A DNA stretch of 53,095 bases from positions 1-53,095 of the forward strand of contig CDMY01000550.1 of the NCBI GenBank assembly GCA_001179505.1, in the 5' to 3' direction. This document shows positions 1-53,095 of this stretch, one piece after another; the first letter of the stretch is position 1, and every line of letters starts with the position of its first letter. The stretch comes from Vitrella brassicaformis CCMP3155 (lineage: Eukaryota > Protista > Chromerida). The position numbers and the translations under genes are program-made. The notes below the pieces were generated by a model. The model did no database searches and was not told the DNA's origin. It saw only the letters and a program-made list of their open reading frames with translations.

Positions 1-2359
1 TGAAGCCCTTCTCCACCCCCTGTAGGCCATACTTGGCCACCTCGTCCAGCCGGGCCTTGTGCACCACCTCACGCAGACCCAGCAGCCGATGCTGCCCGCC
101 ATCCTGCCCCGCATCGGTGGCGAAGCACTGCAGGGGCCGCTTGGACACCTTGGCGCGCTTCGCTCCCGGCTCCTCCTCATCCTCATCCCCCTGCTGCTGC
201 TGCTGCTGCTGCTCATGCCTCGTCCCGCCCACCACCTCCCTGTTGCTGCTGGCCTTGTACACCGCCGAATGGATGAAGTGCTCCGCCGCCGCCCACACAC
301 GCCGGGCCATGTCGCTGTGCCGCACACCGATGGCCTCCTCTGTGATGGCCTCCTTGGCGGTATCCATGTCGAAGAGGTATGACGCGATGCGCCATGGGAG
401 GGGGGAGAGGGGCAGCAGGTGGGCGAGGAGCGCGGCAAATGTGCGGTGGGGGCGGAGGGCCGCGCTGACGGCCGTCATGACGTCGTCCCGCAGCTCATTC
501 AGCACCGTCGCGTACTCGGCCAGCACCAGCTGTCGGCTGCCGCGGTCCTCCTCTGTGGCCGTGGGGATGCGATTGATGTCGGCACCCGCCCGCAGCAGCG
601 AACGGATGATCAACTTGTACTTGTCACACTCCGCCCGGCGCTCCTCCTTGGTCTGATCGGGCGTGTCCGGGTCCTGCTGTTGGCTGAGCCAATACAGCTC
701 CTGGGCAGCGAGGGCGAGGGGTGTCCGATTCAAGGCGTCCTGGGTGTCGATCTGGTCAGCGGGCAGCTTGCGGCAGAGGTACTTGGCGACATAGGGAGAG
801 CCGCATGCCACCGCCATGTCCAGCGGCGTCTGCCCACGGTCGTCGGCTGCCGTCATGTCGGCGCCGTTCGCGGTGATCAGGTTCAGGTAGCTGTCGATGA
901 AGGGCTGGGGATAGTGCCCCCGTGCGAAGATGGCTGCCACGTGCACCAGATTCAGGCCCTGTCCGTCGCAGTTGTTGCTTGTGTCTTGGTCTCCTTCGGT
1001 GGCGAGGGTGGGGTCTCGGTCGATGAGGCGCTCATACATCGACATGAGCAGCTGCAGATACGCGGGAGGAGGGTCGCGCAGCGTACGGGGCAGCTTCATC
1101 ACCATTGCTCCGCGCAGGTCGATGTCGTCCCGCTCCATCAGCAGGTAGGATGCCGCCTCATTGCCACATCGGATGGCCACACAGATGGGCCTGGCGTCCT
1201 CGTCGTCATGATCATTGCCCTTGGCGTTGATATCGGCGCCTCCGCTGATGAGTGCGGTCATGATGCCCTCCTGCAGCCCAGCAGACGACCACTGCGGCAG
1301 GACGACACGACGCTCAGCAAACCCCTCATCATCATCCTCATCATCACCAGGCACATGCGCCTCGATGGGCAGGATGCAGCTGTCGGACTTGTCCTGGATG
1401 GCGAGACTCAGCAGCGGGTAGGCATTGCCAGACGTCTCGCAGCCCTTCTCCCGCAGCTTCGGCGCGACACTCGGATCGGCGCCCTGTTCGGTGAGGTCGG
1501 CCGCTTGCTGTTGGCTTGTGATGGTGCGGCCGATGATGCGCCGGGTCAGCTCCTTGGTTTCGTCGGTGGTGTCGTAAGGAAATCGGGCCTCGATGTCAGT
1601 AGGGCCCAGACAGCCCTCAGGTACAGCAGCGGGGGTGCCCGCCACGACCTCAACACTGACCCCTGCCGCACACAGCCACCACACCACACGACGGGCAGAG
1701 TGAATGTGAGCGGGCATTGCGACCTCTTTCGTGTGAGTCTGTCTGTCTGTCTGTCTGTCTGCTGGCGTACCGTCCTCCTCATAGCCGTCGTCGGATATGT
1801 CGCTGTCTGAGTCACTGTCGGCCTCAGCCACGTCGTCGTCATCACCATCCCCACCCTCCTGCATACCATCCTGACACCACAAAGGGCAAAGGAAAGGAAT
1901 ACGTGACGGACATCGCACCGACTCGTGTTGGTGTTCATGAGTGCCTCACCGATTCGCTATCTTCCCCCTCGTCAGCCATCCCGCCGTCGCGCTCCTCCTC
2001 CTCCTCCTGCTGCTGCTGCTGCTGCTGCTCGTCTAAACGCACAGACACACATCGACACGTGTGCGACACAGACACAGACATGGTCACGGTGCTGGTGGTG
2101 TGTTGATTGGTTTGTGTGGCATGCTCTCACTCACCGCAGTCGATGCCATTGCGATTGTTTTCCTCTAATGGTCCGCCGCCGCCGCCTCCGCGCCCCTCGT
2201 CGTCTACGTCGCCTGCAAACACAAGGAAACGAACATACACACACACACAGACACAGAGTGCAGTGAGAGGCGATGCTGCATGTGTGTGTCTGTGTCATCT
2301 GCATTTGTTTGGAATGTACCTCCATCGCTATCGCCGTCGGCATCGTCACAGCCAGACAT
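1..2359 (-). CDS. Ankyrin-repeat protein of a lineage-expanded family, multi-exon, 3' end outside the window
   Basis: The minus-strand frame is open from about 1660 to position 1: ...GIMTALISGGADINAKG...LITANGADMTAADDRGQTPLDMAVACG...IIRSLLRAGADIN...QQQQQQQGDEDE...LREVVHKARLDEVAKYGLQGVEKGF. Acidic 5' exons start MSGCDDADGDSDG at 2359, by alignment to the paralog at 41271-43907. Confidence 0.85.
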
Positions 2360-3639: not shown

Positions 3640-4334
3640 GAAAACATCACTGTGAGCGCACGCAAGCATGATCACACGCATCACAGCTCTTGACCTGTAC
3701 ATCAACACGGTGACCACAGCTCTTGTGTTACCTTGATGTGCGGGTGTGTGGTGAGTGTTTGCAGTGCAGACCTCTCAACGGTCCCCCTTGTCGATAGCTA
3801 GCTGGTCAGTCATGTTGATGTGCTTGTGCGCTCCGTGTGTGTGTGACAATGATGCTGTATGCTGCTGCTAATGCGTGGTTGCATTTCGCTCCGTGATCAT
3901 GTGCGTGCAGTGTAATCAATCGGTGGCTGGCTGTCCATGTATGGCGCTCAATGCATTCAAGACGCTATGCTCCGCACGCATACGACATGTTTATATATAC
4001 AGACACATGAATGTCCATGTGTGTGTGTGTGTGATTGTCCAATTAGTCAATGCATTCGTCACAACCAATCACACGACAAGGCCCAAATCGCTGCGCCCTT
4101 GTCCATCGAGGAATGCACGGCACTCAGCAGAGCGGAACGCATCATAGAGCAGCCGCTCATACCGCCCGTTTGCCTCTTCGGGCAAGGGCGCGCCTGTGCC
4201 ATCGACAAAGAAGGTGCTGCGAAGCTCTGCACATCAATCATAGGCACAGCCATACACACACGCAAGACAGACACGGGCAGTACAGTGTCTGGAGTGATCT
4301 GATTTCATCTGATCTGGTTTGATCTGATTGTGAA

Positions 4335-5900
4335 TTACTTACTTGGTTTGTCGTAGCACAGCTGTGCAATCAGACCATCGAAGTGTGACAGCTCTTTGGA
4401 CGACGCACTCAGGGCCACTTCAGCGACTGAACACGCCGCGCCCATACAGACAGAGAACGGACGAGTGGCTGGTGCGGTGTGCGACACGGCGTGTTAAAAC
4501 TGACCTTGGAATCCCTTTCGCAGAGCCTCCTCCGTGATGACCTGTCCGCACACGGAGCCAAACACGAGTGCGCTAGTGTGACATACACTTGGCTGGCTGG
4601 GCGATATGTCCATTACCTCTCTCTCACCTCACCTCTTGTGTGGCGTGGAGCAGTGCCTGCGGCGATGAGAATGTGTCTGGGAAGGCCGTGCTGATGCCTG
4701 AATGGAGCAGGGACATGACAATGCCTGAATGAAATGAACCAGGATGGGATGAGTGAGTGTTATCCGACCGACCAGTGAGGAAGTCCGAGTGCGTCCGGTT
4801 AGCACGGTACCTTCCTTGCCACACACACACACACAGACACACACACAGACACACACAGACACACACACAGATAGACAAAGAGGAGCAGACAGACCGATAT
4901 CGTGTCATCACGGTGTCGTGGCTCACGCATTCACTTACTGCGGCTGGCGCTGCGGCAGTGTCAGATAGCGGCCCATGCGGCCATCTGACGTCACACACGC
5001 ACACAACACACCGAATCCGCGATCAAGCAGGTGAGCGACGCTGTGGTGTGCCGTGGTGCGCACCGTCCACTTTCCAGAGGAAGGACGTGTGGTGCACAAA
5101 CCGATCCTTCGTGAAGCTCTGACAATACAGAAAGATATCCGCAAGAGATGGGGGGGATGGGGGGGCACCAACTGACACACACATAGTAGTTCTTCACCTG
5201 TGCGTTGCCGGCCACCTTGCGCATCGACCCGTCGGCCATGCGCACCACATAGTCGTTCTCGGCCACGCCAAAGCCAGACGGCGCGCCAAAGACACCCTCA
5301 TACAGCCGCCTGGCCACAGACACGCAAGGCAAGCACAGCGCAGGTAAGCTCGTATCGGTGTGTCCGTCCGTGTCTGTGTTCTGACCCGGTCCATCGCATG
5401 ACGGGTCGTGGGAAGGGCTCCACGCCAGTGAAGGACTTGGGCAGGATCATGCTGCACAGCAGCACGTTCTCGTCAACCAACACAGTGCCGCCGCCCTGTA
5501 GACACACACACACAGACACACAACGCATGACACACCCACACACGCGGCGTTCTGAGGGGGTGTCACTCTCTGTCCTTGACCCACGCTATATCGCCGGACC
5601 AGAGGGATGCCTGCATCAACAAAATGCACAGATGCGCGCAAGTGAACCACTGCCTTTGGTCTTCGCCTCGCATACCATACCATCCTCCGTCGCATTGTCG
5701 ACATGTACGAGCTGCTGCGGCTTGCCCGATATTCCCAGCACCACAGTCGGCTTGGCGGCCCATCCCGCCCCCCAGTTGAGCAGCACCCACGCCGCTTGTG
5801 GTGGTGTGGTGCGGTACAGGGCCTCCTCCAGCAACAGCTGCTGGAAAATGGGCAGCGAAGGAAGCCGCAAGAACGTCAGCACAGACGCAGACGACGTCAT
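4335..5900 (-). CDS. lplA: Lipoate-protein ligase (BPL/LplA/LipB catalytic domain, plant LplA / LipL2-like)
   Basis: Spliced product: MTSSASVLTFLRLPSLPIFQQLLLEEALYR...PTVVLGISGKPQQLV...GIPLVRRYSGGGTVLVDEN...FPRPVMRWTG...ENDYV...RKVAGNAQSFTKDRFVHHTSFLW...LTLPQRQPQYRANRTHSDFLT. It contains the RRxSGGGTV, K-x-x-GNAQ and HHTSFLW motifs. The last exon and stop are less certain. Confidence 0.88.
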
Positions 5901-6125
5901 TCATCAGATTGGCAGATCACCATGTTCTTTGCGTAGATGAGGGCTTTGCTGAGGGTGCAGAGCCTCGGATCTGCGCGAAGTCCCTCCGCCATCTGCGAGC
6001 CGAAGTGCGGCTCGAGCTCGCTGAGCGCGAAGGGCAGGGAAGTGTGGAGGACGTGGCCGGGCACGTGAGTCGTCGTGAGATCCCCGGTGGTTTCGCAAAT
6101 GACAGCGCGAGAGGCGGCAGCATCG

Positions 6126-7638
6126 ATGGCGGACGGGCCGACGCCAGGGGATACGACGCCGACGCTGGTTGTTATTGAGAAGGTCCTCAACTGGACCACA
6201 TTTGCCCGGTTCGGCGGCTCATTCTTCGCCGGGATCTGCGAGGTCAGCACGGAAAACCAGGACAGCGAAAAGCACAGAGGATACTCAATGACATGCTCAT
6301 GTGTGTGTGTGTGTGTGTGTGATTGGGCCTTCTTGCAGATGGTGACGTTCTATCCCTTGGACACCGTTGGCAAGCGGTTGATGTTCGACAGCACCAAACG
6401 GGCGTTTCGAATCGACGAGAAAATGCGGCAGATGCGAGAGGCCATCTTCCTCCACGGCAGGGCAGCGGTGCAGTGGAGCGAGCCAGTCAGCGTCATTCGC
6501 TCTTTCTATGCCGGGTTCCTATGGGCGGGAGTGTACAAGGTCTCACAACGGACCTGGCAATTCGGGTGAGGCAATTGCCAGACCGATATTACGGACAGAT
6601 GGACATCGTGCCGTGCTCACTGTGTGTCTGCCTGGTGATTGCTGCAGTTCTCAGCCGATATTCCGCGAGCTGATTGACCATTCGTGGCCTGATGTGTTCC
6701 ATGCGAGGTTCGGCCACAGGCTGGGCGACGTGTTGCTGTCGGCGACCGCAGGGGCGCTGATGGGCGTTGGCGAGATCATCTTCGTCCCATTCAACATGCT
6801 CAAGATCAAAAGTCAGATGTACAACCAAGACGGGTGGGACAACACCCAATACAAACAATACAAAGGACGCCTTGGCTTGCTTGGCATCAATCAGTGTCAT
6901 ATGCGGATTCTGATGTCATGTCATGTCAGGCCAGTGCTGTCGTTGCTGTCGAGCGGGAGGATCCGCATGCCTGACCTGTGGACAGGATGGACATGGACCA
7001 TGGCGCGGAATGTCCCCGGCAGCTTCGCCCTCTTCGGAGGGCAGGAGGTCGCCCGACACTGGCTCTTCAAACAGCACGATACCTCCGTCGTGCAGGTAGT
7101 CCACACCACACCACACCACACCACACCACACGGCACATGAACACGCGGGCGGATAGGGTGAACAAACCGTCATGTGGTCGTCTGTCTGTTTTCTCAGCAC
7201 TTTGCGGCCTCCATGTTTGGGGCCACGTGTAGCATCCTTGTCGCCTCGCCTTTCGACGTCATCAAGGTCAGTCAGTCAGCAGGGTGCAAACATCACGTCA
7301 CCCCCATCGTTAGTGTGTCCATAATGGAATCGACTGTGTGTGTGCTTGTGTGTCGGGTCGGCAGACCAGGGTCCAGGGGGAGCACTTCGGTCAATCCAAG
7401 AGCGGCTTCGTCGTGGCAAGGTGAGCACACATCCCAGACACACGCGGATGGCCGGCCGCCCACTCTCCTGTCTGACCGTGTGTGCGCTGTCAGGGAATTG
7501 GTCCGCAATGAAGGCTTCCTGGCGTTGCTGAAAGGCGTCACGCCAAAAATGCTGGTGATTGGTCCCAAGCTGGCCTACGGGATGGGCCTTGCGCAGCTGC
7601 TGTCGGCGAAGCTGCTGGGGAGGGAGGGCAACAGATGA
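6126..7638 (+). CDS. GGC1: Mitochondrial carrier family protein, GTP/GDP carrier (Ggc1/Yhm1-like)
   Basis: Three carrier repeats: YPLDTVGKRLM, VPFNMLKIKSQ, SPFDVIKTRVQ. It also has Ggc1-like stretches AGICE, YKVSQRTWQFG, AGALMGVGEI, GWTWTMARNVPGSFALFGG and KGVTPKMLVIGPKLAYGMGLAQ. The start may instead be ATG 6099. Confidence 0.85.
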
Positions 7639-8723: not shown

Positions 8724-8918
8724 ACTCCTGAGCACACACCCCGCAGACAGCGACAGTAGCCTCTCCAGAGGACGAAGAGATGAAGAGGGGCCCGACTCGC
8801 TTGTTGTCTCGCGTACCTTTCAGAGTTCCGAAGTGAGGGCCTCAACAAAAGTGGAACGTTTCCAGAAAGGGGAATACAACGCGCTTCGGTGAACGACGAG
8901 AAGACAAAGACGACCACG

Positions 8919-8926
8919 AGCTCGCA
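8919..8926. promoter_or_regulatory. AGCTCGCA (reverse complement TGCGAGCT) in the MIP/CDPK divergent spacer
   Basis: Exact motif about 30 bp upstream of the CDPK ATG. Confidence 0.35.
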
Positions 8927-8956
8927 TTTGAGCGCCCACGGTGTGGCTTCCGTCTC

Positions 8957-12323
<3,367 letters not shown>

Positions 12324-44397: not shown

Positions 44398-47262
44398 TCA
44401 GCCACCCATTCGATCACCGATAGGGCCCCCCTCGCCATCCGCTGTCCCCGCACCCCCCTGCCGCTCCTCCTCGTATATCAGCCGGGCCCCCAGCAACGCC
44501 TCCAGAGGCCACCCGTCCTGCATCCGCAGCCGCCGGGCAAGCGACGGCACACTGGGGGCCTCCCCCGTCTGAGTGCGCGTTGATGGAGCCGAGTCTTCCA
44601 GCGGCCGGCTGCCGGCAGGTGATTCCACGCTGAGGGCCTCCTGCTGCTCTGTGCCGGGAGGCTTGTCTTGTCCCCCCTTGGCTGTCGGCCGCTTCTTCTT
44701 TCTCCGACGTGTCTTGGCCTTGGTAATGTTGGTCGCCTCTTCGTCAGGCATAATCCGGCCAGCAGGGCCTTCATCGTGGGCAGAGAGCGATGGCTGGATC
44801 TCAGAGGGGGCCGTCAGACCCACAGCAGCAGCTTGAGCGAGGCCTCTGCGGTAGGGCTGCCGTAATGCAGGGCCACCACCAGCGGCGACATCGGCCGGTG
44901 AGGGCAACGGACAGACAGTCTGCTCCTGGCCCCTCTGGCCGGCCACCGCCGCTGTCCTGGACTTCTTGTCTTTTCTTATCTGCTGTTTCTCCGGGATGTC
45001 GGCTGCACTGCTGCTCTCCTGTGGCTGCTGCTGACTCGACTGGCCTGCTGTTGCCGACTCGGCTGGCAAGATGCCGCTCAAGAGACCGACAGCCCTTTGT
45101 TGAATCTCGGAACGGTTCGCCCACATCCGGATGGAGAGAAGCTTCAGGTAGTCGCCGGCAAGCCAGGTGGCCGTGCTTCTGAGCAGCCACATGCCGTTGG
45201 GCGGTGAGATGAACAGAAGGGAGCATGGGTATCCCAGGTTGAGAGAGTGGATGGTGGGGCCTTGAGCAACGGTCATCACGATGTCGCAGCAGACGGTGAC
45301 CAGGAGGGCCGGCCGCAGCAGTCCGCACCATAGCAGAGGGAAGCCGACAGCGAGGTCAATGACACGGACGATGGCATGCCCCAACATGAGTGTTAAAACT
45401 CCAACCCACTTCGGCAGAGACCTGCCGTCGCCAAGCTTCCTCTGCTCCCTTGTCCGACGCACAGCATAGTTGTAGAACTCTGCCCACATCGTCCACAGCC
45501 CATAAGCAGAGCTCGCCACCGTCAGCGCACCGAGCGCCGTCACCAACAGCTTCACCAGATAGCAGCAGCCACCCACCATGCCGGCAAGACGGTGACAAAG
45601 GTATTGCGGCATCAGTCGCAGCAGCGCCGCCTTGCGCACGGAAGGCTCACCAACAACGGCACAACAAGAAAAGGCCCAACAGCACAAACCGTGAGGCTCA
45701 GTGAGGAAAACGAGCAGCAGATGCAGGCCAAGCGAAATCCCCAGGCACACTCGGACAAAGTCAATGCCGAACTGAGTGGAGAGGATGCTCACGAGGCTCA
45801 TCAGAGCAGTGAAGAGCATGACAGCGAAGACCATCCTCGGATCCCGCCACAAACTGTGCCGTCGCTTACCATCCGCGTCGCCTTTTTCCGTCCCTTGCTC
45901 ATAGCGCAGCCAAAGTCGCCATAGCACCAAGTCCACATCGAAGTGGAAGAAGAGGGAGACAATAACGAGGACAATCAGCCCCGACAAAGCCCAAACAATC
46001 AGCCGATAGGTCGACCTGTAGCAGGCGTCGGCGATAAGGGTCGAGCAGAGGAATGCCAGCAGGACAATATACTGCAGCATCCTCAGCACGACAAGACCAT
46101 AGGCCATCCCCGCCTTCAGCACGTATGTGCGCCCCCAGGGCACCTTGACAGCTTCTGGCACCTTGATAGCCTCCTCTCCCATGTAGGTGCTGCCAACGAG
46201 AGAGAAGCCAGCCAAAAGGGCGGCGCCGAGAGCCAGAGTGAGTAGAAGGAGCCACAGAATGCCCAACCACCACATAAGCTGCCCCATCCAGCCCCTCGCG
46301 CCTCCCTCAACCTTAGCCGACCCCTGCCCCGCCGTCACCACTGGCACTTTGACCCAAGCTGGGGTCCGATCCCTCGGCCGCGTCTGCCAAAACACATGAA
46401 CGAACGCATTAGCACGTTCACCGTCAGATCGATGCATGTGTGTGCGTGTGTGTGGATGATTCTCACCTGTGAGATCGCCGGTCGTTGAGGCGCTCGGGAA
46501 GGTCACATATTGTGTGCTCGGCCACCGTAGCCACGGCCGTGTGTGGGGCTGGTCAGGGAAGGGAGACTCCCGACGCCGACATGTGGCCGCCGCGAGAAAA
46601 TGCTTGACGCCTGTGTCGGTGTCATTCAGCCACGAGGCCATTTGGATGGGTGTGAGGGCCAACTGGAGATAGCAAGAGCGGCACACGGCCAGCAGGTGGG
46701 CCAGAGTCTCGACGCTGTCCTCATCATCCTCATCACAGCCATCTGCTGCCCCCGACCCGATGCCGTCAGCAGTGAAGACGGTCCCGTTGAACATGACGCT
46801 GCCCGAGGTCGGCTGCAGGTAGAGATGGAAGCAGTGGCCAAACGACCCAGCCCTCTCGTCCAACACACACAGGATAACCGCCTCATAGCCGTCGGGCACG
46901 GCGGGCCGCCTCTCCAGCTTGTCCTTGGCCGTCGTCTGCTGCCGAGAGAGCCGACATGCCTTCCTCACGTCGACACGCAGAGTGAATGGGTCGTATCTCT
47001 CGTCGCGAGAGGCCGTCCCGGTGGCATTCAGGTCGACAGATCTGCCCGACTGGCGGCCGAGGAAGGGAATCAACGATGCGATGCTCCACCAGCCGCCCTC
47101 TGCTGTACCGCCATCAGTGGCAATGAGTCGTGAGTCGTCGAATTGCACCTGCTTGCAGGGCTCGAGAGGGCCGAGGTAGTCGTCCCAGCTGCTGATGACG
47201 GACCAGCAGACCACCGCAGCGGCAAGCAGAGGGACGCACGAGAAGAAATGCGCCTCCTTCAT
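44398..47262 (-). CDS. Large hypothetical multipass membrane protein with signal peptide
   Basis: 954-aa ORF with an N-terminal hydrophobic leader (FFSCVPLLAAAVVCWSV), many TM-like segments and a low-complexity basic tail (KAKTRRRKKKR). It contains an intron-like stretch at 46384-46466. No family recognised. Confidence 0.65.
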   Translation of the reverse strand: MKEAHFFSCVPLLAAAVVCWSVISSWDDYLGPLEPCKQVQFDDSRLIATDGGTAEGGWWSIASLIPFLGRQSGRSVDLNATGTASRDERYDPFTLRVDVRKACRLSRQQTTAKDKLERRPAVPDGYEAVILCVLDERAGSFGHCFHLYLQPTSGSVMFNGTVFTADGIGSGAADGCDEDDEDSVETLAHLLAVCRSCYLQLALTPIQMASWLNDTDTGVKHFLAAATCRRRESPFPDQPHTRPWLRWPSTQYVTFPSASTTGDLTGENHPHTRTHMHRSDGERANAFVHVFWQTRPRDRTPAWVKVPVVTAGQGSAKVEGGARGWMGQLMWWLGILWLLLLTLALGAALLAGFSLVGSTYMGEEAIKVPEAVKVPWGRTYVLKAGMAYGLVVLRMLQYIVLLAFLCSTLIADACYRSTYRLIVWALSGLIVLVIVSLFFHFDVDLVLWRLWLRYEQGTEKGDADGKRRHSLWRDPRMVFAVMLFTALMSLVSILSTQFGIDFVRVCLGISLGLHLLLVFLTEPHGLCCWAFSCCAVVGEPSVRKAALLRLMPQYLCHRLAGMVGGCCYLVKLLVTALGALTVASSAYGLWTMWAEFYNYAVRRTREQRKLGDGRSLPKWVGVLTLMLGHAIVRVIDLAVGFPLLWCGLLRPALLVTVCCDIVMTVAQGPTIHSLNLGYPCSLLFISPPNGMWLLRSTATWLAGDYLKLLSIRMWANRSEIQQRAVGLLSGILPAESATAGQSSQQQPQESSSAADIPEKQQIRKDKKSRTAAVAGQRGQEQTVCPLPSPADVAAGGGPALRQPYRRGLAQAAAVGLTAPSEIQPSLSAHDEGPAGRIMPDEEATNITKAKTRRRKKKRPTAKGGQDKPPGTEQQEALSVESPAGSRPLEDSAPSTRTQTGEAPSVPSLARRLRMQDGWPLEALLGARLIYEEERQGGAGTADGEGGPIGDRMGG

Positions 47263-47453: not shown

Positions 47454-50009
47454 ATGGGCGGTTCTTCGTTGTTTGGCGGCCTATCCGCACCACTACCATT
47501 ACAGGTGGGCATCCTCAACACATACACAGGACACCATCTGGCCACCAAACCTGCCGCTGCTATGTCTCGCAATGGTTGGCTCTTCCTGCCTATGTGTGTG
47601 TCGCTTTCAAGAGTTATGGAGGTTCTGGCGCACCCGTATCTGGAGCCGCTCCTGCTGCTGCTGGTGGTGCTGCTGCTCCCTATCAACCCCCCACAGTACG
47701 CACACACATTGCCCCATACACGGTTGTGTTGACGGTCATCCATGTGTCTGTGTCTGGTGGCTGCACGGACCTGTGGTTGCTTGGTTGTGTGTCGATGTGC
47801 TGCAGGAGCAGACAGGAGTGTTCCAGCGGGCCGACACTGACATGCAGGTGTGGTACTGCACAGCACTCGGCACACGAAAACGATCCAGGCAGACCCATGT
47901 CATTGGCCGTGTTCTTGTTTGCTGTCTTGGTGTGTGCGCATATTCGAGGAAGTAGTAGTTCAGGCGATGCCTCCCGCAAACCTCCGCCCTACCCGCCCCA
48001 GGTGAACATCATCACATACGCTCTCCTCTCCCCCCTCCCCACCTCATCTCCATTCAATGGCGGACAAACCTCATTCACGTCGTTCTGGTGCGATGGATGT
48101 CTGCAGGGACAGGCGGGCGGTGGGGCTTCGGGCGGTTCTTCGTTGTTTGGCGGCCTATCCGCACCACTACCACAACAGGTGGGCATCCTCACACACATAC
48201 ACAGGACACCATCTGGCCACCAAACCTGCCGCTGCTATGTCTCGCAATGGTTGGCTCTTCCTGCCTATGTGGGTGTCGCTTTCAAGAGTTATGGAGGTTC
48301 TGGCGCACCCGCATCTGGAGCCGCTCCTGCTGCTGCTGGTGGTGCTGCTGCTCCCTATCTACCCCCCCAAGTACGCGCACACATTGACCCATACACGGCT
48401 GTGTGTGACGGTCATCCATGTGTCTGTGTCTGGTGGCTGCACGGACCTGTGGTTGCTTGGTTGTGTGTCGATGTGCTGCAGGAGCAGACGGGAGTGTTCC
48501 AGGGGGCCGACACTGACATGCAGGTGTGGTACTGCACAGCACTCGGCACACGAAAACGATCCAGGCAGACCCATGTCATTGGCCGTGTTCTTGTTGGCTG
48601 TCTTGGTGTGAGCAATTGGCCATACCCACGTAGGCGATTAGTTTAGAACCCCTTTTTTCCTTCCTGACGGTGTAGGCGCACACACAGGCGGATGCCATCC
48701 TAGACACTTTGCGTCAGCAGGTAAGGGAAGGGAAAGCTGTCTCGTGCATGATGTGTTTGCTGTCCGGCGTCCCAGTTGTTGCAGAGGGGAGATACCCTAC
48801 CGTTGGCGGCTTGTGAGATCAACCTCGCAGCAGGCTCTCGTCTCCCCGCCGCTGCACAACAGGATACGGGGGAAGACATTTTGCGTCAGGTGGTGACGAA
48901 AACTACCCACTGTTTTACCCTCATATGTTTGCCTACCGTGTGTTACCACTAGGGCTTGTCTGAGGTGCCCAGCGGAAGCAGGCACAGTGGTGAAGTAGAT
49001 TGCGTTGAAGAGGTGGCGTCAGCACCTGCGCCAGACAGATCTCCTCAGGTACGTACAGAAGAAGGTTTGCTGCCATGCAAATGCGTATGCTTGCGCAACC
49101 TATTCACCAGGGGCCGCCCGATGTTGCCATGGCGCCGGCTTCAGCGTCCTACGGTACCCCCATGGAAGCTGACGAGGGCGGCGGTACCGTCGTGAAGGAG
49201 GTGATGAAAAGAAGCTCACTAAGTTTATCACGGTGGTATCACTAGGTGCTCTCTTCATGCACGCGCTGAAAACAGGCTACGACCGATGCACCCGGGGCGA
49301 GGGACGACGGAGCAACCACCGGAGGGGTACATCGCAAGCAATCATGCACGCACACTCATGTCTCCTAAATGTGTCGTTTCTTAAGGCTGTGGCGTCGCAT
49401 CAGGCTGACTGTCGCACGCACAAGGACGCAGAGAAGGCCATGCAGATCGTCCGCATTGGCGACAAGACATGCGGCGTGCTCTTGGCCATCCATCCGTGCG
49501 GGCGGGTTGCTGATTTCGCCCTCCTCACTCGTCCAGAAAGCCCCACCCAGGTGTCCATGATGGTCGCCCGTTTTCGCAAGAGGCTGCTGGACCGCGGCAT
49601 TGCGGATCGGATGACCATCATCTATGACGACGCCTGCCACCTGGACGAGTGGGTGCAGCGACGGGCACGCGATGGCGAGGCCACGGAGACGGTGATGGCC
49701 TTGGCCAAGGACCTCTTCGTCATCGACCGTATGCACCTCGTCGGGCACCGCCGGGAGAAGTGCAAGACCTACCACAACATGGACAACTACCCGCACCTGG
49801 AGGGTGTCAACTCAGAGGTGCACACACAAGGCAGACTTTGCATGCAGCCCATTACAGTGTATCGCGGTCTTCAGGTGTGCGAGCAGTTTCACCCATGGTT
49901 CAATGGCTATGCGCCGCAGATGAGGTACAGCTCGGTGTCCTACTTCAGGTTTTTCATGTATCATGCCCTGCGCCATCGGAACTGGATGAAAGACATGGGC
50001 TACTGGTGA
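47454..50009 (+). CDS. Multi-exon protein: Gly/Ala/Pro-rich N-terminus plus a C-terminal KDZ-transposase-like domain
   Basis: From about 48110 the exons join through phase-0 GT-AG introns into the domain exon at 49386. The join across 47935-48110 and the start codon are uncertain. Confidence 0.6.
47456..48610 (+). repeat. Direct duplication of about 480 bp (47456-47934 and 48130-48610) separated by about 195 bp of unique sequence
   Basis: Two near-identical copies, each containing exons GGSSLFGGLSAPLP(L/Q)Q, SYGGSGAP(V/A)SGAAPAAAGGAAAPY and EQTGVFQ(R/G)ADTDMQ with their introns. Confidence 0.95.
49386..50009 (+). mobile_element. KDZ (Kyakuja-Dileera-Zisupton) transposase domain; element ends not found
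   Basis: Motif order: KTCGVLLAIHPCG ... PESPTQV ... IIYDDACHL ... FVIDRMHLVGH-x3-C ... GVNSE|VCEQFHPWFN. The last motif forms only after removing intron 49818-49874. Confidence 0.75.
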
Positions 50010-50234: not shown

Positions 50235-52400
50235 CTACAACAACCTATTCGAGGTGGGATAGAATGCGCAAGGGATGGGGTGGTGCCGGCAGGGATAATT
50301 GACAAAGCACCACACGTGCCTCAAGACAGTGTCGTATACTGGCATGTAACACACACACACACACATACACACACATGGCGCATCGCCGCATACACTGACA
50401 TGGCTCAATCCGGCGCATATACAAGTCTATCCCCGTCATATTGATAGAAACACAACACACTAGAGTCCACACACGTGCATGTGTGTGTGTGGAGATGGAC
50501 AAAAATGGGAGAAGGAGGGGGTCAATACCGCTCGGCGGCTGTGCGTGTCGGGCCAGACATCTGATGGCCACAAATCTCCCGCGCACGCACTCGTGGCATG
50601 AGCTGCACATGGGTAACACAACCCCACACGCAGAACCGTCTGACTGAACCCAGACGGCCCGCGAGAACAAGCAAATCGGCACTCTGTAAGAAAGCTCACC
50701 TCATGTTTCAATCCTCTCACTTCCAAGTAAGCCTCACCAAAGCCAACCGTCCACACACACTGGGCGGCCATAAGCTGCTCAGCCACACACAATTACGGCA
50801 AAAGCAACACACAATGCGAAGGTCAATGCCCACTATTTTCGCGTGTATTGTTACCCTGGCGCGATGAGGATGATGGTATTGTTGTCAGTAGTGCGGCACT
50901 AGCTCCCAGGCACTCCCCTTGGCGCAGCACGGCCATCTCTGACACAGACAGACACAAAGGCCAATCAACTCTGTCGGTCTGTGGGTGGGCGGCAAGGGTC
51001 ACCCACTGCCAGAAAAGTGAAAATTGTGGCTGCGTCGGTGGTGTGTGTGTGCAGGTGCTGCTCACCTCTGCTTTTGGCACTCGTGTGGCCCATGAGCTGA
51101 TGCACTTGACCCATGTAATGGATGTACCGCACGACACCCACAGAGCCAAACAGACCGTCCATGTCGGTGTCAATCGGACGCAGCAACACCTGATAGAAAG
51201 GAAAACAAAAGACATGGTGTGGTGGCGGGGAGGAGGTCCCAGTGTGGCTCTCTTTGTGGTTGGTTGGTTGGCCTTTTCGAGGATGAACTTGCCTTTATTG
51301 TACATTTGCGATTCCTCAAAAGCCTCCTCGTACCGCCAACCTGACATGGCACCCATAACATCAACACACACAGGGTGTGCCAAAAAAGATCCAAAGCTGT
51401 GGCGCCTTGGTGTCTGCTCACCTGCCGCTGTAGCCTCTCAGCGTGCCACTCGTGCCACCCGTGCTGGCACATGCCGGCTGTGCCGTCCCAGCAATGCCCT
51501 CATGCCCCAGCATGCCCACCTGGGCGGCAGAGAGAGAGAAGGGAGGCACCAACACACCTGCACAACAGCACACACGGCACATAGGGAAATGAGTGGACGG
51601 ACGGATGGATGGATGGATGGAGAGGGCGTGACACCAGCCCACCTGGGGGGCAGAGAGAGAGGAGGGAGGCACCAACACACCTGCACAACAGGACACACGG
51701 CACATGGGGGAATGAGTTGATGAACGAATGAATGGATGGTTGGATGGATGGATGGAGAGGGCGGGGAGAGAGGGCCTAATGATGTGTAGATTGCCACACA
51801 ATTGATGTGCAGATTGACACAGCGCCCTGGCACACACACGGCACACACAATGCACAGGGCCGTTTCGTTATACGTGTCTGAGCCTGTCTGCACAGCCACC
51901 CACCCACCCACCCACCCACATTAACTGAGCGCGGCGGCAACGCACTGTGGTGATGGAAACCACAGCCATATGTGCCTACCCGTACACATGCATTTGTCTG
52001 TGTTGGGGTAGGCGGCGGTAAGGGTGCGTGCCTGGGAGAAGTCATGGGTCGCTTGATCTACACACGCACACACACGTGAGTGGATGTGTGCAATTCTGCA
52101 TGGTTGCCGTCCCGCAGTTTCTTGCGCAGTCCGTTCGACGTGGTGGGGCCGTATATCACCTTTCCTGCAAGCATCCGTGTGCACATCCGGGCCATTTCTC
52201 TCTCTTTGGATGCGTACCCTTGCTTTGGCTCACCTCCTGGCCGTGGGCGTCACGCACCACGATGGATGGCTTTGTGCGTAGTCTGATGACCCAACCAACA
52301 CACACACACAGTTTTATTCTCCTTCCGCTCTCTCCCTCTCGACCTCTTCCGAACCTCATGAGGACGACCGTCGACCTGTCGAGGATCAAGGGCTGGCGGG
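50235..52400 (-). CDS. Probable multi-exon hypothetical gene; model incomplete
   Basis: Exon-like pieces bounded by splice signals: WRYEEAFEESQMYNK, VLLRPIDTDMDGLFGSVGVVRYIHYMGQVHQLMGHTSAKSR, DLYMRRIEPCQ and YDTVLRHVWCFVNYPCRHHPIPCAFYPTSNRLL*. I could not close the full chain of frames. Confidence 0.35.
51514..51763. repeat. Tandem duplication, unit about 123 bp, two copies
   Basis: gcccacctggg...cagagagaga...gaggcaccaacacacctgcacaaca...atgagt...(tgga)n-gagggcg occurs at 51514 and 51637. Confidence 0.9.
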
Positions 52401-53095
52401 GACGTCTCTCTCTCTCTCTCTCTCTCTCTCGCGCGCACGCGCGCGGTGCTTGTGTGCCAGGTTATCGACGCTGGCCCTTAAGGCCTTCTTTTCGCGCTTC
52501 GCGCGGCACCACCTCTCTCTTTCTGTTACGACCGAGGTCGCCTCGATACACCCACCCAGTCCTCCACCTGTATGCAGGCAGGGAGTCAGCCAGACAGACA
52601 TACAGACAGACAGACAGACAAACATACGATGGATGAATGAATGAATGTGTGTAAGTGTGTGTGTGTTGCTTTTGGTATCGCCTGAAAGGAGGTGAAATCA
52701 ACACGTATGAAGGTCGTTCAGGGGTCGAATCGTGCCTTCTCTGCTAGTCATGAATCGCTCTGCTACGAGGGACCTTGGCCATGCGTGGCTGCAGAGATAG
52801 ATCACCTGCAAGACCACTCACAGACAGACAGACTGACAGACTGACAGGCAGGCAGGCAGGTAGGCAGGAATGCATGGGTGCGTGCCTGATACCTGCTGCC
52901 TGTTGCTTCATGCGCACGGTGGACATCAACAGGTGGGCTGCGTGGGAGAGATCGACACACAGGGAGGGTTTGATTGATTGCTGTGTTTCCCGTGCTTTCC
53001 TTCCCGACCATTTCCGTGGATTTCCTGTCATTCCCGGAGCAATGTGACCTTATGGAGTCGAAGCCCATTTTCTTTCCTTCTCCAAAATTCCGAGC

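What the first reader, a model, noticed from the sequence alone, without database searches (positions are those of the whole stretch)
49386..50009. Spliced KDZ (Kyakuja-Dileera-Zisupton) transposase domain in an alveolate-type genome
Seen: the order G-x4-HPCG, ES..QV, YDDAC, IDRMH-x3-H-x4-C, GVNSEVCEQ matches the KDZ core as I recall it for the Dileera/HMGXB3-like type. The acidic NSEVCEQ motif is restored only by removing a 57-nt GT-AG intron (49818-49874), which suggests a spliced, maintained gene. No upstream CxC zinc cluster, TIR or TSD is visible. Instead the domain is fused to a Gly/Ala/Pro-rich N-terminus built from short phase-0 exons. Established: KDZ elements are best known from fungi, where they are often linked to TET/JBP genes, and from fish, and HMGXB3 is a domesticated member. 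Inference: this is either a domesticated KDZ gene or part of an element family that I do not know to be described in chromerids.
Basis: partly seen in the sequence, partly recalled or inferred. Interest (0 to 1): 0.78.

Follow-up and report, generated by a model that had tools for sequence, protein, structure and literature searches.

The report
Truncated KDZ transposase-derived gene, Vitrella
This is a transcribed, spliced gene of the alga Vitrella brassicaformis that keeps only the rear three quarters of a KDZ-type "cut-and-paste" transposase domain, so it is a kept remnant rather than a jumping element: a modest addition to a known kind.

Summary
A database protein from an MMETSP transcript (P0001, 229 aa) lacks those 19 codons. 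It passes Pfam KDZ (PF18758, 32.5 bits against a cut-off of 26.6), whereas exon 1 alone scores 16.6 and the unspliced ORF scores nothing.

The genome (Vitrella brassicaformis CCMP3155) holds one paralog, on C312. It is 63% identical, is also transcribed, and has a 56-nt intron at the same codon. dN/dS between the two is 0.21.

No TIRs, no shared termini and no TET/JBP neighbour were found.

Full-length relatives carry an upstream zinc-cluster module, the strand with the first catalytic Asp ("DGxxK"), and often a chromodomain. Both Vitrella copies lack all of these. Structure models place the missing strand as beta-1 of the RNase H-like fold.

The gene is therefore most likely an immobile, N-terminally truncated, selected KDZ derivative, not an active element.

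The Gly/Ala/Pro-rich "fusion" rests only on the ab initio gene model. The transcript-derived ORF starts at 49129.

Vitrella also has a full-length single-copy KDZ gene (C449). The scan had already noted KDZ genes on other DNA of this genome. KDZ-derived host genes are already published for vertebrates. Interest is moderate.

The parts
49129..49200 (+). First coding exon of the transcript-supported ORF (start codon ATG at 49129; 'MAPASASYGTPMEADEGGGTVVKE'). It is low-complexity and predicted disordered.
   Evidence: Exact mapping of P0001 (MMETSP Transcript_17707 ORF) onto the window; pLDDT below 50 in the model.
49201..49275 (+). Intron, 75 nt, GT-AG.
   Evidence: Gap between mapped P0001 blocks; boundaries read.
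49276..49326 (+). Short coding exon ('ATTDAPGARDDGATTGG'), a disordered linker.
49327..49385 (+). Intron, 59 nt, GT-AG.
49386..49817 (+). Main exon, carrying the KDZ core from the conserved 'C.T.K' motif through beta-2, beta-3, alpha-1, beta-4 (YD-D122-AC) and beta-5 (D155) to H158/H162/C167 and N183-S-E. Homology to the family begins at this exon's 5' end.
   Evidence: Pfam KDZ 16.6 bits for this exon alone; family profile positions 149-282 at E 3.5e-44; conserved columns; secondary structure.
49818..49874 (+). Intron, 57 nt, GT-AG, phase 0. It is in frame and stop-free if retained. It lies between 'NSE' and 'VCEQ'.
   Evidence: Absent from P0001 and P0151. The paralog has a 56-nt intron at the same codon.
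49875..50009 (+). Last exon, running from 'VCEQFHPW...' to the stop codon at 50007-50009. It carries the near-invariant Glu (E188 of P0001, the third residue of the D-D-E triad) in the long helix, plus the C-terminal helices.
   Evidence: Family profile positions 281-321 at E 1.1e-7; E conserved in 63 of 65 relatives; helix 186-201.
47456..48613 (+). Upstream block of two tandem units (period about 675 nt, 96-98% identical) containing short G/A/P-rich open exons. It is 82% identical in nucleotides to C312:4540-5164(-), upstream of the paralog. Whether it belongs to this gene is uncertain. The annotated model CEM22088.1 draws exons from it; the transcript ORF does not reach it.

Best explanation
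The locus is an expressed four-exon host gene of Vitrella brassicaformis. The annotated, longer model is CEM22088.1. Its last two exons encode the C-terminal three quarters of a KDZ-type DDE transposase catalytic domain.

What is kept (shown): strands beta-2 to beta-5 and the helices of the RNase H-like fold, the second Asp (YD-D-AC), the Glu of 'CEQ', and the invariant E92, D155, H158, H162, C125 and C167 cluster.

What is missing (shown by absence in profile searches; the role is inferred from models): the zinc-cluster region found in relatives (H.C..C, C..P..C..H, CxC5), the central strand beta-1 that carries the first catalytic Asp ('vvDGxxKxxRxxC'), and the chromodomain inserted after it.

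The truncation, the NSE|VCEQ intron and an upstream sequence block are all shared with the single paralog on C312. The truncated form therefore most likely predates the duplication (inference by parsimony). Since then the two copies have diverged to saturation at silent sites while staying under purifying selection.

Most likely mechanism (inferred): the protein cannot cut and paste DNA on its own. It survives as an exapted module. It could be a nucleic-acid- or zinc-binding partner or regulator, possibly working with or against a full-length KDZ protein such as the one encoded on C449. It is not part of a mobile element.
For: Family membership:
- Pfam KDZ above the cut-off for the spliced database proteins.
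- 215 phmmer relatives. Of 66 proteins scanned (64 relatives plus the two Vitrella proteins), 45 hit KDZ, 16 Chromo and 8 CxC5.
- ESM Atlas neighbours are KDZ.

Transcription and splicing:
- P0001 and P0002 both come from MMETSP transcripts.

Copy number and mobility:
- Only two loci share this sequence.
- No TIRs. Nothing is shared downstream of the stop codon.
- No TET/JBP hit (weak test).

Selection:
- pN 0.265 against pS 0.659, dN/dS 0.21, dS about 1.6. Fisher p = 4e-14.
- All invariant and near-invariant family columns are kept in both copies.

Missing N-terminal module:
- The Asp column is D in 43 of the 45 relatives that cover it.
- An HMM of that module finds nothing in any frame of the window, in 10 kb of C312, or in the four Vitrella protein models.
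- The family profile hits only positions 149-322 in both loci.
- The N-termini have no similarity to any relative.

Structure:
- P0001 model, pLDDT 82, has four strands and no beta-1.
- Its 30 best structural matches are all integrase or DDE transposase cores, Z 5.4-7.2. The alignments to retroviral integrases among them start at chain residues 69-72, after beta-1.
- In the full-length relative P0043, strand 77-83 with D81 extends the same alignments back to chain residues 52-59. That covers beta-1 with its Asp. Z rises to 8.2-8.7 and the aligned length to 133-145.
Against: - No ortholog in another species was found or could be sought in synteny, so long-term retention rests on one paralog pair.
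- dS is saturated. dN/dS is therefore approximate, and it cannot show that both copies are constrained today.
- A domain that lacks the central strand of its sheet may not fold. The AlphaFold model is driven by an alignment of full-length relatives and cannot settle this.
- The beta-1 assignment rests on alignment ranges, not on a residue-level superposition.
- A very short or very divergent upstream exon supplying a strand would escape the profile searches.
- One conserved Glu in beta-3 (E in 54 of 66) is L/V in the two copies. This fits loss of the ancestral activity but says nothing about a new one.
Confidence: 0.68

Rival explanations
1. It is a decaying relic. A fragment of an old KDZ transposon happens to be transcribed and spliced inside host transcription units and has no function of its own.
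For: - The first catalytic strand and the DNA-binding zinc modules are missing.
- A conserved Glu in beta-3 is lost in both copies.
- The N-terminal regions are low-complexity and unrelated between the paralogs.
- No ortholog closer than 41% identity exists among 1.84 billion representatives.
- Vitrella also holds bare C-terminal KDZ fragments on C941 and C659.
Against: - Both ORFs are intact despite silent-site saturation (dS about 1.6), with dN/dS 0.21.
- Every other invariant or near-invariant family residue is kept in both copies.
- The intron position is kept and both copies are transcribed.
Confidence: 0.15
2. The gene model is incomplete. A full-length KDZ transposase is encoded here, with its N-terminal zinc cluster and 'DGxxK' strand in upstream exons that are too short or too divergent to detect, or supplied in trans by another gene.
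For: - Vitrella genes are split into many tiny exons. The full-length KDZ gene on C449 gave only 6-10-bit hits for its N-terminal exons, which shows how weak such signals are.
- The annotated model CEM22088.1 extends 1.5 kb further upstream.
- All second-half catalytic residues are retained.
Against: - In C449 the weak N-terminal hits were collinear and recognisable. Nothing comparable appears in any frame of the window or of C312.
- The plus-strand space upstream is bounded by a 954-aa minus-strand ORF ending at 47262.
- The transcript ORFs start with Met at 49129. For the paralog, the source labels the ORF type:complete, and its N-terminus is unrelated.
- No stand-alone N-terminal module was found genome-wide with the family profile.
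Confidence: 0.09
3. It is part of an active or recently active KDZ element family in chromerids.
For: - The KDZ domain is present.
- An upstream block is shared with the paralog at 82% nucleotide identity.
- Other KDZ loci exist in the genome.
Against: - There are only two copies, 63% identical.
- There are no TIRs and no shared sequence beyond the stop codon.
- The transposase lacks a third of its catalytic domain.
- The Vitrella genome holds only about 1.5 Mb of transposable elements (PMC4501334).
Confidence: 0.03

Closest known systems
KDZ (Kyakuja-Dileera-Zisupton) DDE transposases, Pfam PF18758 (Iyer et al. 2014; Zisupton of Bohne et al. 2012; reviewed in PMC12730594)
   Same: The sequence matches above the Pfam cut-off. 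The motif order is the same: PCG, ES..QV, YDDAC, DxxH-x3-H-x4-C, N..CEQ. The predicted fold is RNase H-like. The second Asp and the Glu are kept.
   Different: It has no CxC zinc cluster, no 'DGxxK' beta-1 strand with the first Asp, no chromodomain, no TIRs or TSDs, no TET/JBP neighbour, and only two diverged copies. It is about 190 residues of domain, against 550-720-residue full-length relatives.
KDZ/Zisupton-derived host genes of vertebrates (PMC3424704 citing Bohne et al. 2012; F-box::CxC7 genes of fishes, PMC12062965)
   Same: Pieces of a KDZ transposase are kept as expressed host genes without element structure.
   Different: The fish F-box genes kept the zinc-chelating CxC7 domain. Here the opposite part, the catalytic core without zinc cluster, is kept. 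The lineage is also different (an alveolate), and no function is known.
Vitrella's own full-length KDZ gene, G000:C449:61565-63490(-), protein P0050 (721 aa)
   Same: It is in the same genome and the same family (PF18758, 35 bits). It is multi-exon, single-copy, and has the same core motifs.
   Different: P0050 keeps the CxC-like cluster (residues ~88-135), 'IIDGGRK' (D356), YDNGC and the Glu, which is a complete D-D-E triad. It is not the closest relative of the window gene: P0001 ranks 29th among hits to its main exon. Its introns lie at other positions.
Catalytic cores of retroviral integrases and DDE transposases (ASV and HIV integrase, ISCth4, IstA, Mu, TnsB, Mos1, Hermes)
   Same: These are the best structural matches to the model, Z 5.4-7.2 over 108-145 residues. 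D122 and E188 sit where the second Asp and the Glu of those enzymes sit: after beta-4 and in the long helix.
   Different: Sequence identity is only 5-17%. The matched region starts after beta-1. The Z values are middling, so this shows a shared fold, not shared activity.

Membership tests
KDZ transposase domain (Pfam PF18758) | Sequence match above the curated gathering score (26.6 bits) | tested here: met
   P0001 scores 32.5 bits at E 8.8e-8, covering profile positions 51-217 of 217. P0151 scores 30.5 bits. Exon 1 alone scores 16.6 bits and the unspliced ORF none. The paralog P0002 scores 23.9 bits, just below the cut-off.
KDZ transposase domain (Pfam PF18758) | RNase H-like (DDE) fold | tested here: met
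   The AlphaFold model has pLDDT 82. All 30 best VIA matches are integrase or DDE transposase cores, Z 5.4-7.2. Foldseek alone gave nothing below E 0.38. The Z values are middling.
KDZ transposase domain (Pfam PF18758) | Complete catalytic triad D-D-E | tested here: not met
   The second Asp (D122) and the Glu (E188) are present. The 'DGxxK' Asp, which is D in 43 of 45 relatives and lies on beta-1 in the P0043 model, is absent from both Vitrella copies.
KDZ transposase domain (Pfam PF18758) | Associated N-terminal CxC zinc-chelating cluster | tested here: not met
   There is no hit to the N-terminal module HMM in any frame of the window or of C312. The family profile hits only positions 149-322. 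PF18718 gave no hit in the genome, though that search has weak power.
Mobile KDZ element (Zisupton/Kyakuja/Dileera transposon) | Terminal inverted repeats or defined termini, with 7-8-bp target-site duplications | tested here: not met
   Only low-complexity CA/TG inverted matches surround the gene. The two loci share nothing beyond the stop codon.
Mobile KDZ element (Zisupton/Kyakuja/Dileera transposon) | Several similar dispersed copies | tested here: not met
   There are two loci at 63% amino-acid and 68.6% nucleotide identity. The other KDZ loci are far more distant.
Mobile KDZ element (Zisupton/Kyakuja/Dileera transposon) | Linked TET/JBP dioxygenase gene (a fungal feature, not universal) | tested here: inconclusive
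   PF12851 gave no hit in the whole genome, but the control genomes did not ring either.
Domesticated (exapted) transposase gene | Intact ORF that is transcribed and correctly spliced | tested here: met
   MMETSP transcript-derived ORFs exist for both paralogs and map exactly onto the exons.
Domesticated (exapted) transposase gene | Purifying selection after loss of mobility | tested here: met
   dN/dS is 0.21 with dS about 1.6 between two copies that share the truncation, the intron and the upstream block. This is a single comparison and the silent sites are saturated.
Domesticated (exapted) transposase gene | Syntenic orthologs in related species | not testable with these tools
   No chromerid or other eukaryotic genome collection was on hand. 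The exhaustive protein search found no relative above 41% identity outside Vitrella.
Dileera / HMGXB3-like subtype | Clustering with reference Dileera or HMGXB3 sequences | not tested
   No reference sequences were available through the tools and Iyer et al. 2014 is not held. The relatives found carry CxC5 and chromo domains. The nearest named ones are from a chytrid and from amphioxus.

The most novel reading that the evidence does not exclude
The truncated domain may not be dead. It may have been rebuilt into a minimal nuclease or strand-transfer module. In both Vitrella copies the segment just before beta-2 reads 'VRIGDKT.G', where relatives have 'RFY.RT.G'. That segment could pair with beta-2 as a canonical beta-1/beta-2 hairpin and supply a new first Asp. 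Alternatively, the missing strand could be donated in trans, for example by the full-length C449 protein. Either way, this would be a KDZ core that works without its zinc cluster, and a rare case of a DDE fold that survives the loss of its central strand.
Probability: 0.1. Interest if true: 0.7.

Novelty: new member of a known kind. Interest (0 to 1): 0.36.

Why it matters
KDZ transposases are documented in fungi, animals, and green and brown algae. In the held literature I found no description of them in chromerids or other alveolates.

This locus shows that a transposon-poor alveolate genome keeps transcribed, intron-bearing KDZ derivatives. At least one pair has been under purifying selection while lacking the strand that carries the first catalytic Asp. 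That makes it a small natural test of what a transposase core is kept for once it cannot transpose.

The value is limited for four reasons:
- Public databases already hold the protein.
- Pfam's own threshold already places it in KDZ.
- Domesticated KDZ pieces are already known from vertebrates.
- The scan has flagged other KDZ genes in this genome.

Tried and rejected
1. Pfam on the unspliced ORF gave no family at E<=10. The KDZ call needs the spliced product.
2. PF18758, PF18718 and PF12851 searched directly against the six-frame genome found nothing. The controls did not ring either, so these are weak negatives.
3. Foldseek against the PDB gave no match better than E 0.38. Only the exhaustive VIA search showed the fold.
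4. A profile search of PDB sequences hit only chromodomains, from the insertion that the Vitrella proteins lack. No KDZ catalytic domain has been solved.
5. I suspected a chromodomain-like start in the paralog's N-terminus ('YYRYH...SHWAPVEEL'). Neither Pfam at E<=1 nor phmmer --max against all relatives supports it, so I dropped the idea.
6. 'VVLVNGDTD' in the paralog could be a degenerate 'DGxxK' strand. The module HMM did not find it and it lies in an internal repeat. It remains unsupported.
7. The conserved upstream 'introns' could host intron-encoded RNAs. Rfam gave no hit at E<=1 and folding z-scores ran from -1.3 to +0.4. Not supported.
8. UniRef labels the protein 'ISXO2-like transposase'. 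Pfam does not reproduce this.
9. The word-indexed protein search found only the paralog and one chytrid protein.
11. Iyer et al. 2014 is not held.
12. One literature search was wasted on 'CxC', which matched chemokine papers.
Full report
**What the window is.** The 53,095-base window is a complete scaffold of Vitrella brassicaformis CCMP3155. The annotated protein CEM22088.1 (P0151, 426 aa) sits on a contig of exactly that length. The assembly has 72.7 Mb in 1064 contigs, as published for Vitrella (PMC4501334).

**The observation.** The proposed intron 49818-49874 begins with GT and ends with AG. Because it is 57 nt and stop-free, the unspliced frame also stays open, so splicing had to be shown some other way. 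Three results show it.
- The exhaustive phmmer search returned P0001. This 229-aa ORF comes from MMETSP Transcript_17707, is 100% identical to the two exons and lacks the 19 intron codons. It maps exactly to 49129-49200 | 49276-49326 | 49386-49817 | 49875-50006, and all its introns are GT-AG.
- The genome holds exactly one paralog, at C312:1772-2373 on the minus strand. It has an intron at the same codon (NSE|VCEQ). That intron has an unrelated sequence and is 56 nt long, so there it must be removed to keep the frame.
- The family-wide spacing 'NTxxCEQ' is obtained only after splicing.

The spliced product was studied only through the database proteins.

**Is it KDZ?** Exon 1 alone reaches 16.6 bits on Pfam PF18758, below the 26.6-bit cut-off. 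The unspliced ORF matches nothing. The spliced proteins pass: P0001 at 32.5 bits with E 8.8e-8, and P0151 at 30.5 bits. phmmer against 1.84 billion representatives gave 215 hits at E<=1e-3, of which only the two Vitrella proteins score below 1e-30. Of the 66 proteins scanned (64 relatives plus the two Vitrella proteins), 45 hit KDZ, 16 Chromo and 8 CxC5. In the ESM Atlas, 21 of the 30 nearest clusters are KDZ. The family assignment is therefore sound. The nearest named relatives are a chytrid protein (Obelidium) and an amphioxus protein. The rest are unnamed metagenome proteins. The Dileera/HMGXB3 subtype could not be tested.

**What is missing.** In the alignment of relatives the conserved architecture has three parts:
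- a zinc-type module 'H.C....C......DG..K..R..C ... C...P......C..H';
- often a chromodomain;
- the core 'C.T.K ... RT.G.L....PCG ... ES..QV ... YDDACHL ... DRFH..NH....C ... NT..CEQ'.

The Asp of 'DG' is D in 43 of the 45 sequences that cover it. Both Vitrella proteins begin their homology at 'C.T.K', which is the 5' end of exon 49386.

Several searches looked for the upstream module and failed.
- An HMM of the module found nothing in any of the six frames of the whole window, in 10 kb of C312, or in the four protein models.
- The full family profile hit only positions 149-322 at both loci.
- The N-termini of the two proteins resemble no relative.
- On the plus strand, the upstream space is closed by a 954-aa minus-strand ORF that ends at 47262.

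**Structure.** The AlphaFold model of P0001 (pLDDT 82) has four strands (71-76, 82-88, 118-121, 151-154) and the helices of an RNase H-like domain. D122 follows a strand directly, and E188 lies in the long helix 186-201.

Foldseek found nothing convincing. In the exhaustive VIA search, however, the 30 best chains are all retroviral integrase or DDE transposase cores, with Z 5.4-7.2. The alignments to retroviral integrases among them begin at chain residues 69-72, which is after beta-1.

I then modelled a relative that keeps the upstream module, P0043 (pLDDT 86). Its strand 77-83, with D81 of 'DG', is confident. A chromodomain fold follows it (Z 9.7 to a solved chromodomain). The alignments to the same integrases now start at chain residues 52-59, which includes beta-1 and its catalytic Asp. 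They also have more aligned residues and a higher Z of 8.2-8.7.

The inference is that the 'DGxxK' strand is beta-1 and carries the first Asp of the triad, and that the Vitrella pair lacks it. This rests on alignment ranges, not on a residue-level superposition. In addition, a Glu in beta-3 that is conserved in 54 of 66 sequences is L or V in the two copies.

**Element or gene?**
- There are only two copies, 62.8% identical in protein and 68.6% in DNA.
- There are no TIRs around the gene, only CA/TG low-complexity matches.
- Nothing is shared downstream of the stop codon.
- No TET/JBP match was found, though that test is weak.
- Both copies are transcribed.
- Between them pS is 0.66 (dS about 1.6, near saturation) and pN is 0.27, so dN/dS is 0.21. 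The excess of silent change is highly significant (Fisher p = 4e-14).

The copies share the truncation point, the intron and an upstream block. The truncated form therefore most likely existed before the duplication, and the constraint acted on it. This is the main argument for a kept, immobile derivative rather than a relic. It rests on one pair, and no ortholog elsewhere could be sought.

**The N-terminal 'fusion'.** The G/A/P-rich exons lie in a tandemly duplicated block (47456-48613, period about 675 nt, 96-98% identical). This block recurs at 82% nucleotide identity upstream of the paralog.

In the paralog the block lies about 790 nt upstream of the start of a transcript ORF that its source labels type:complete, and that ORF has an unrelated N-terminus. 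In the window, the transcript ORF starts at Met 49129.

The fusion is therefore unproven.

**Context in the genome.** The family profile also found three further loci.
- A collinear multi-exon gene at C449:61565-63490(-). Its database model P0050 (721 aa) has a CxC-like cluster, 'IIDGGRK' (D356), YDNGC and the Glu, and it passes Pfam KDZ at 35 bits. It is single-copy.
- Two bare C-terminal fragments, on C941 and C659.

The scan's own notes list five other KDZ findings on other DNA of this genome, two of them followed up as kept, intron-rich, single-copy genes. I did not test those notes, apart from finding C449 independently.

**Literature.** KDZ and Zisupton elements are reported from fungi, fish, nematodes, oysters, Chlamydomonas and Ectocarpus. 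Zisupton-derived host genes are reported from vertebrates (PMC3424704), and F-box::CxC7 fusions from fishes (PMC12062965). I found nothing on chromerids.

**Verdict.** The gene is a new member of a known kind. Its one notable twist is a selected KDZ core that lacks its first catalytic strand. Interest is moderate.

Noticed in passing
window 47456-48613 and L003 (G000:C312) 4540-5164, minus strand: This upstream block is shared by both KDZ loci at 82% nucleotide identity, although silent sites in the KDZ exons are saturated. Within the block, the putative introns (48179-48286 and 48371-48440) are 91-92% identical. The short G/A/P-rich exons are about 80% identical and differ by in-frame indels of 3 and 18 nt. 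Possible causes are later gene conversion, slippage-prone exons, or constrained non-coding DNA. Rfam and folding z-scores gave nothing.
   Followed up: partly
L007 (G000:C33:116698-116810), matching window 48018-48130: A 113-nt stretch is 98% identical at a third, otherwise unrelated locus. It comprises the 3' part of an intron plus the first 24 nt of the following exon. There too it sits between a GT donor and downstream exon sequence. Its origin is unexplained; it could be a small duplicated intron/exon junction or an introner-like piece.
   Followed up: partly
L019 (G000:C449:56000-65999), 5566-7491 and about 8765-9133, minus strand: This is a full-length, multi-exon, single-copy KDZ gene (database model P0050, 721 aa). 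It has a CxC-like cluster, 'IIDGGRK', YDNGC, DRLHVYNH..C and 'VCE', and scores 35 bits on Pfam KDZ. It is not the closest relative of the window gene.
   Followed up: partly
L020 (G000:C941) 3749-3937, plus strand, and L021 (G000:C659) 965-1108, minus strand: These are two open frames that resemble each other. They match only the C-terminal part of the KDZ family profile (positions 255-320, containing 'DSEVCEQFFRWLNGF'). No upstream core was detected.
   Followed up: no
window 47616-48176: The public gene model CEM22088.1 reads its first three exons ('MEVLAHPYLEPLLLLL...', 'SRQECSSGPTLTCR', 'DRRAVGLRAV...') in frames other than the Gly/Ala-rich one. UniRef also labels the protein 'ISXO2-like transposase', which Pfam does not reproduce. 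The 5' part of the model looks unreliable.
   Followed up: partly
window 44398-47262, minus strand: A 954-aa uninterrupted ORF with many hydrophobic stretches (a membrane-protein look) lies on the opposite strand and bounds the space upstream of the KDZ gene. It was not analysed.
   Followed up: no
window 51514-51744: Two direct copies of about 108 nt lie 123 nt apart (90% identical) in a region of GGAT/GACA-type simple repeats (also at 52575-52874). This is probably ordinary low-complexity DNA.
   Followed up: no
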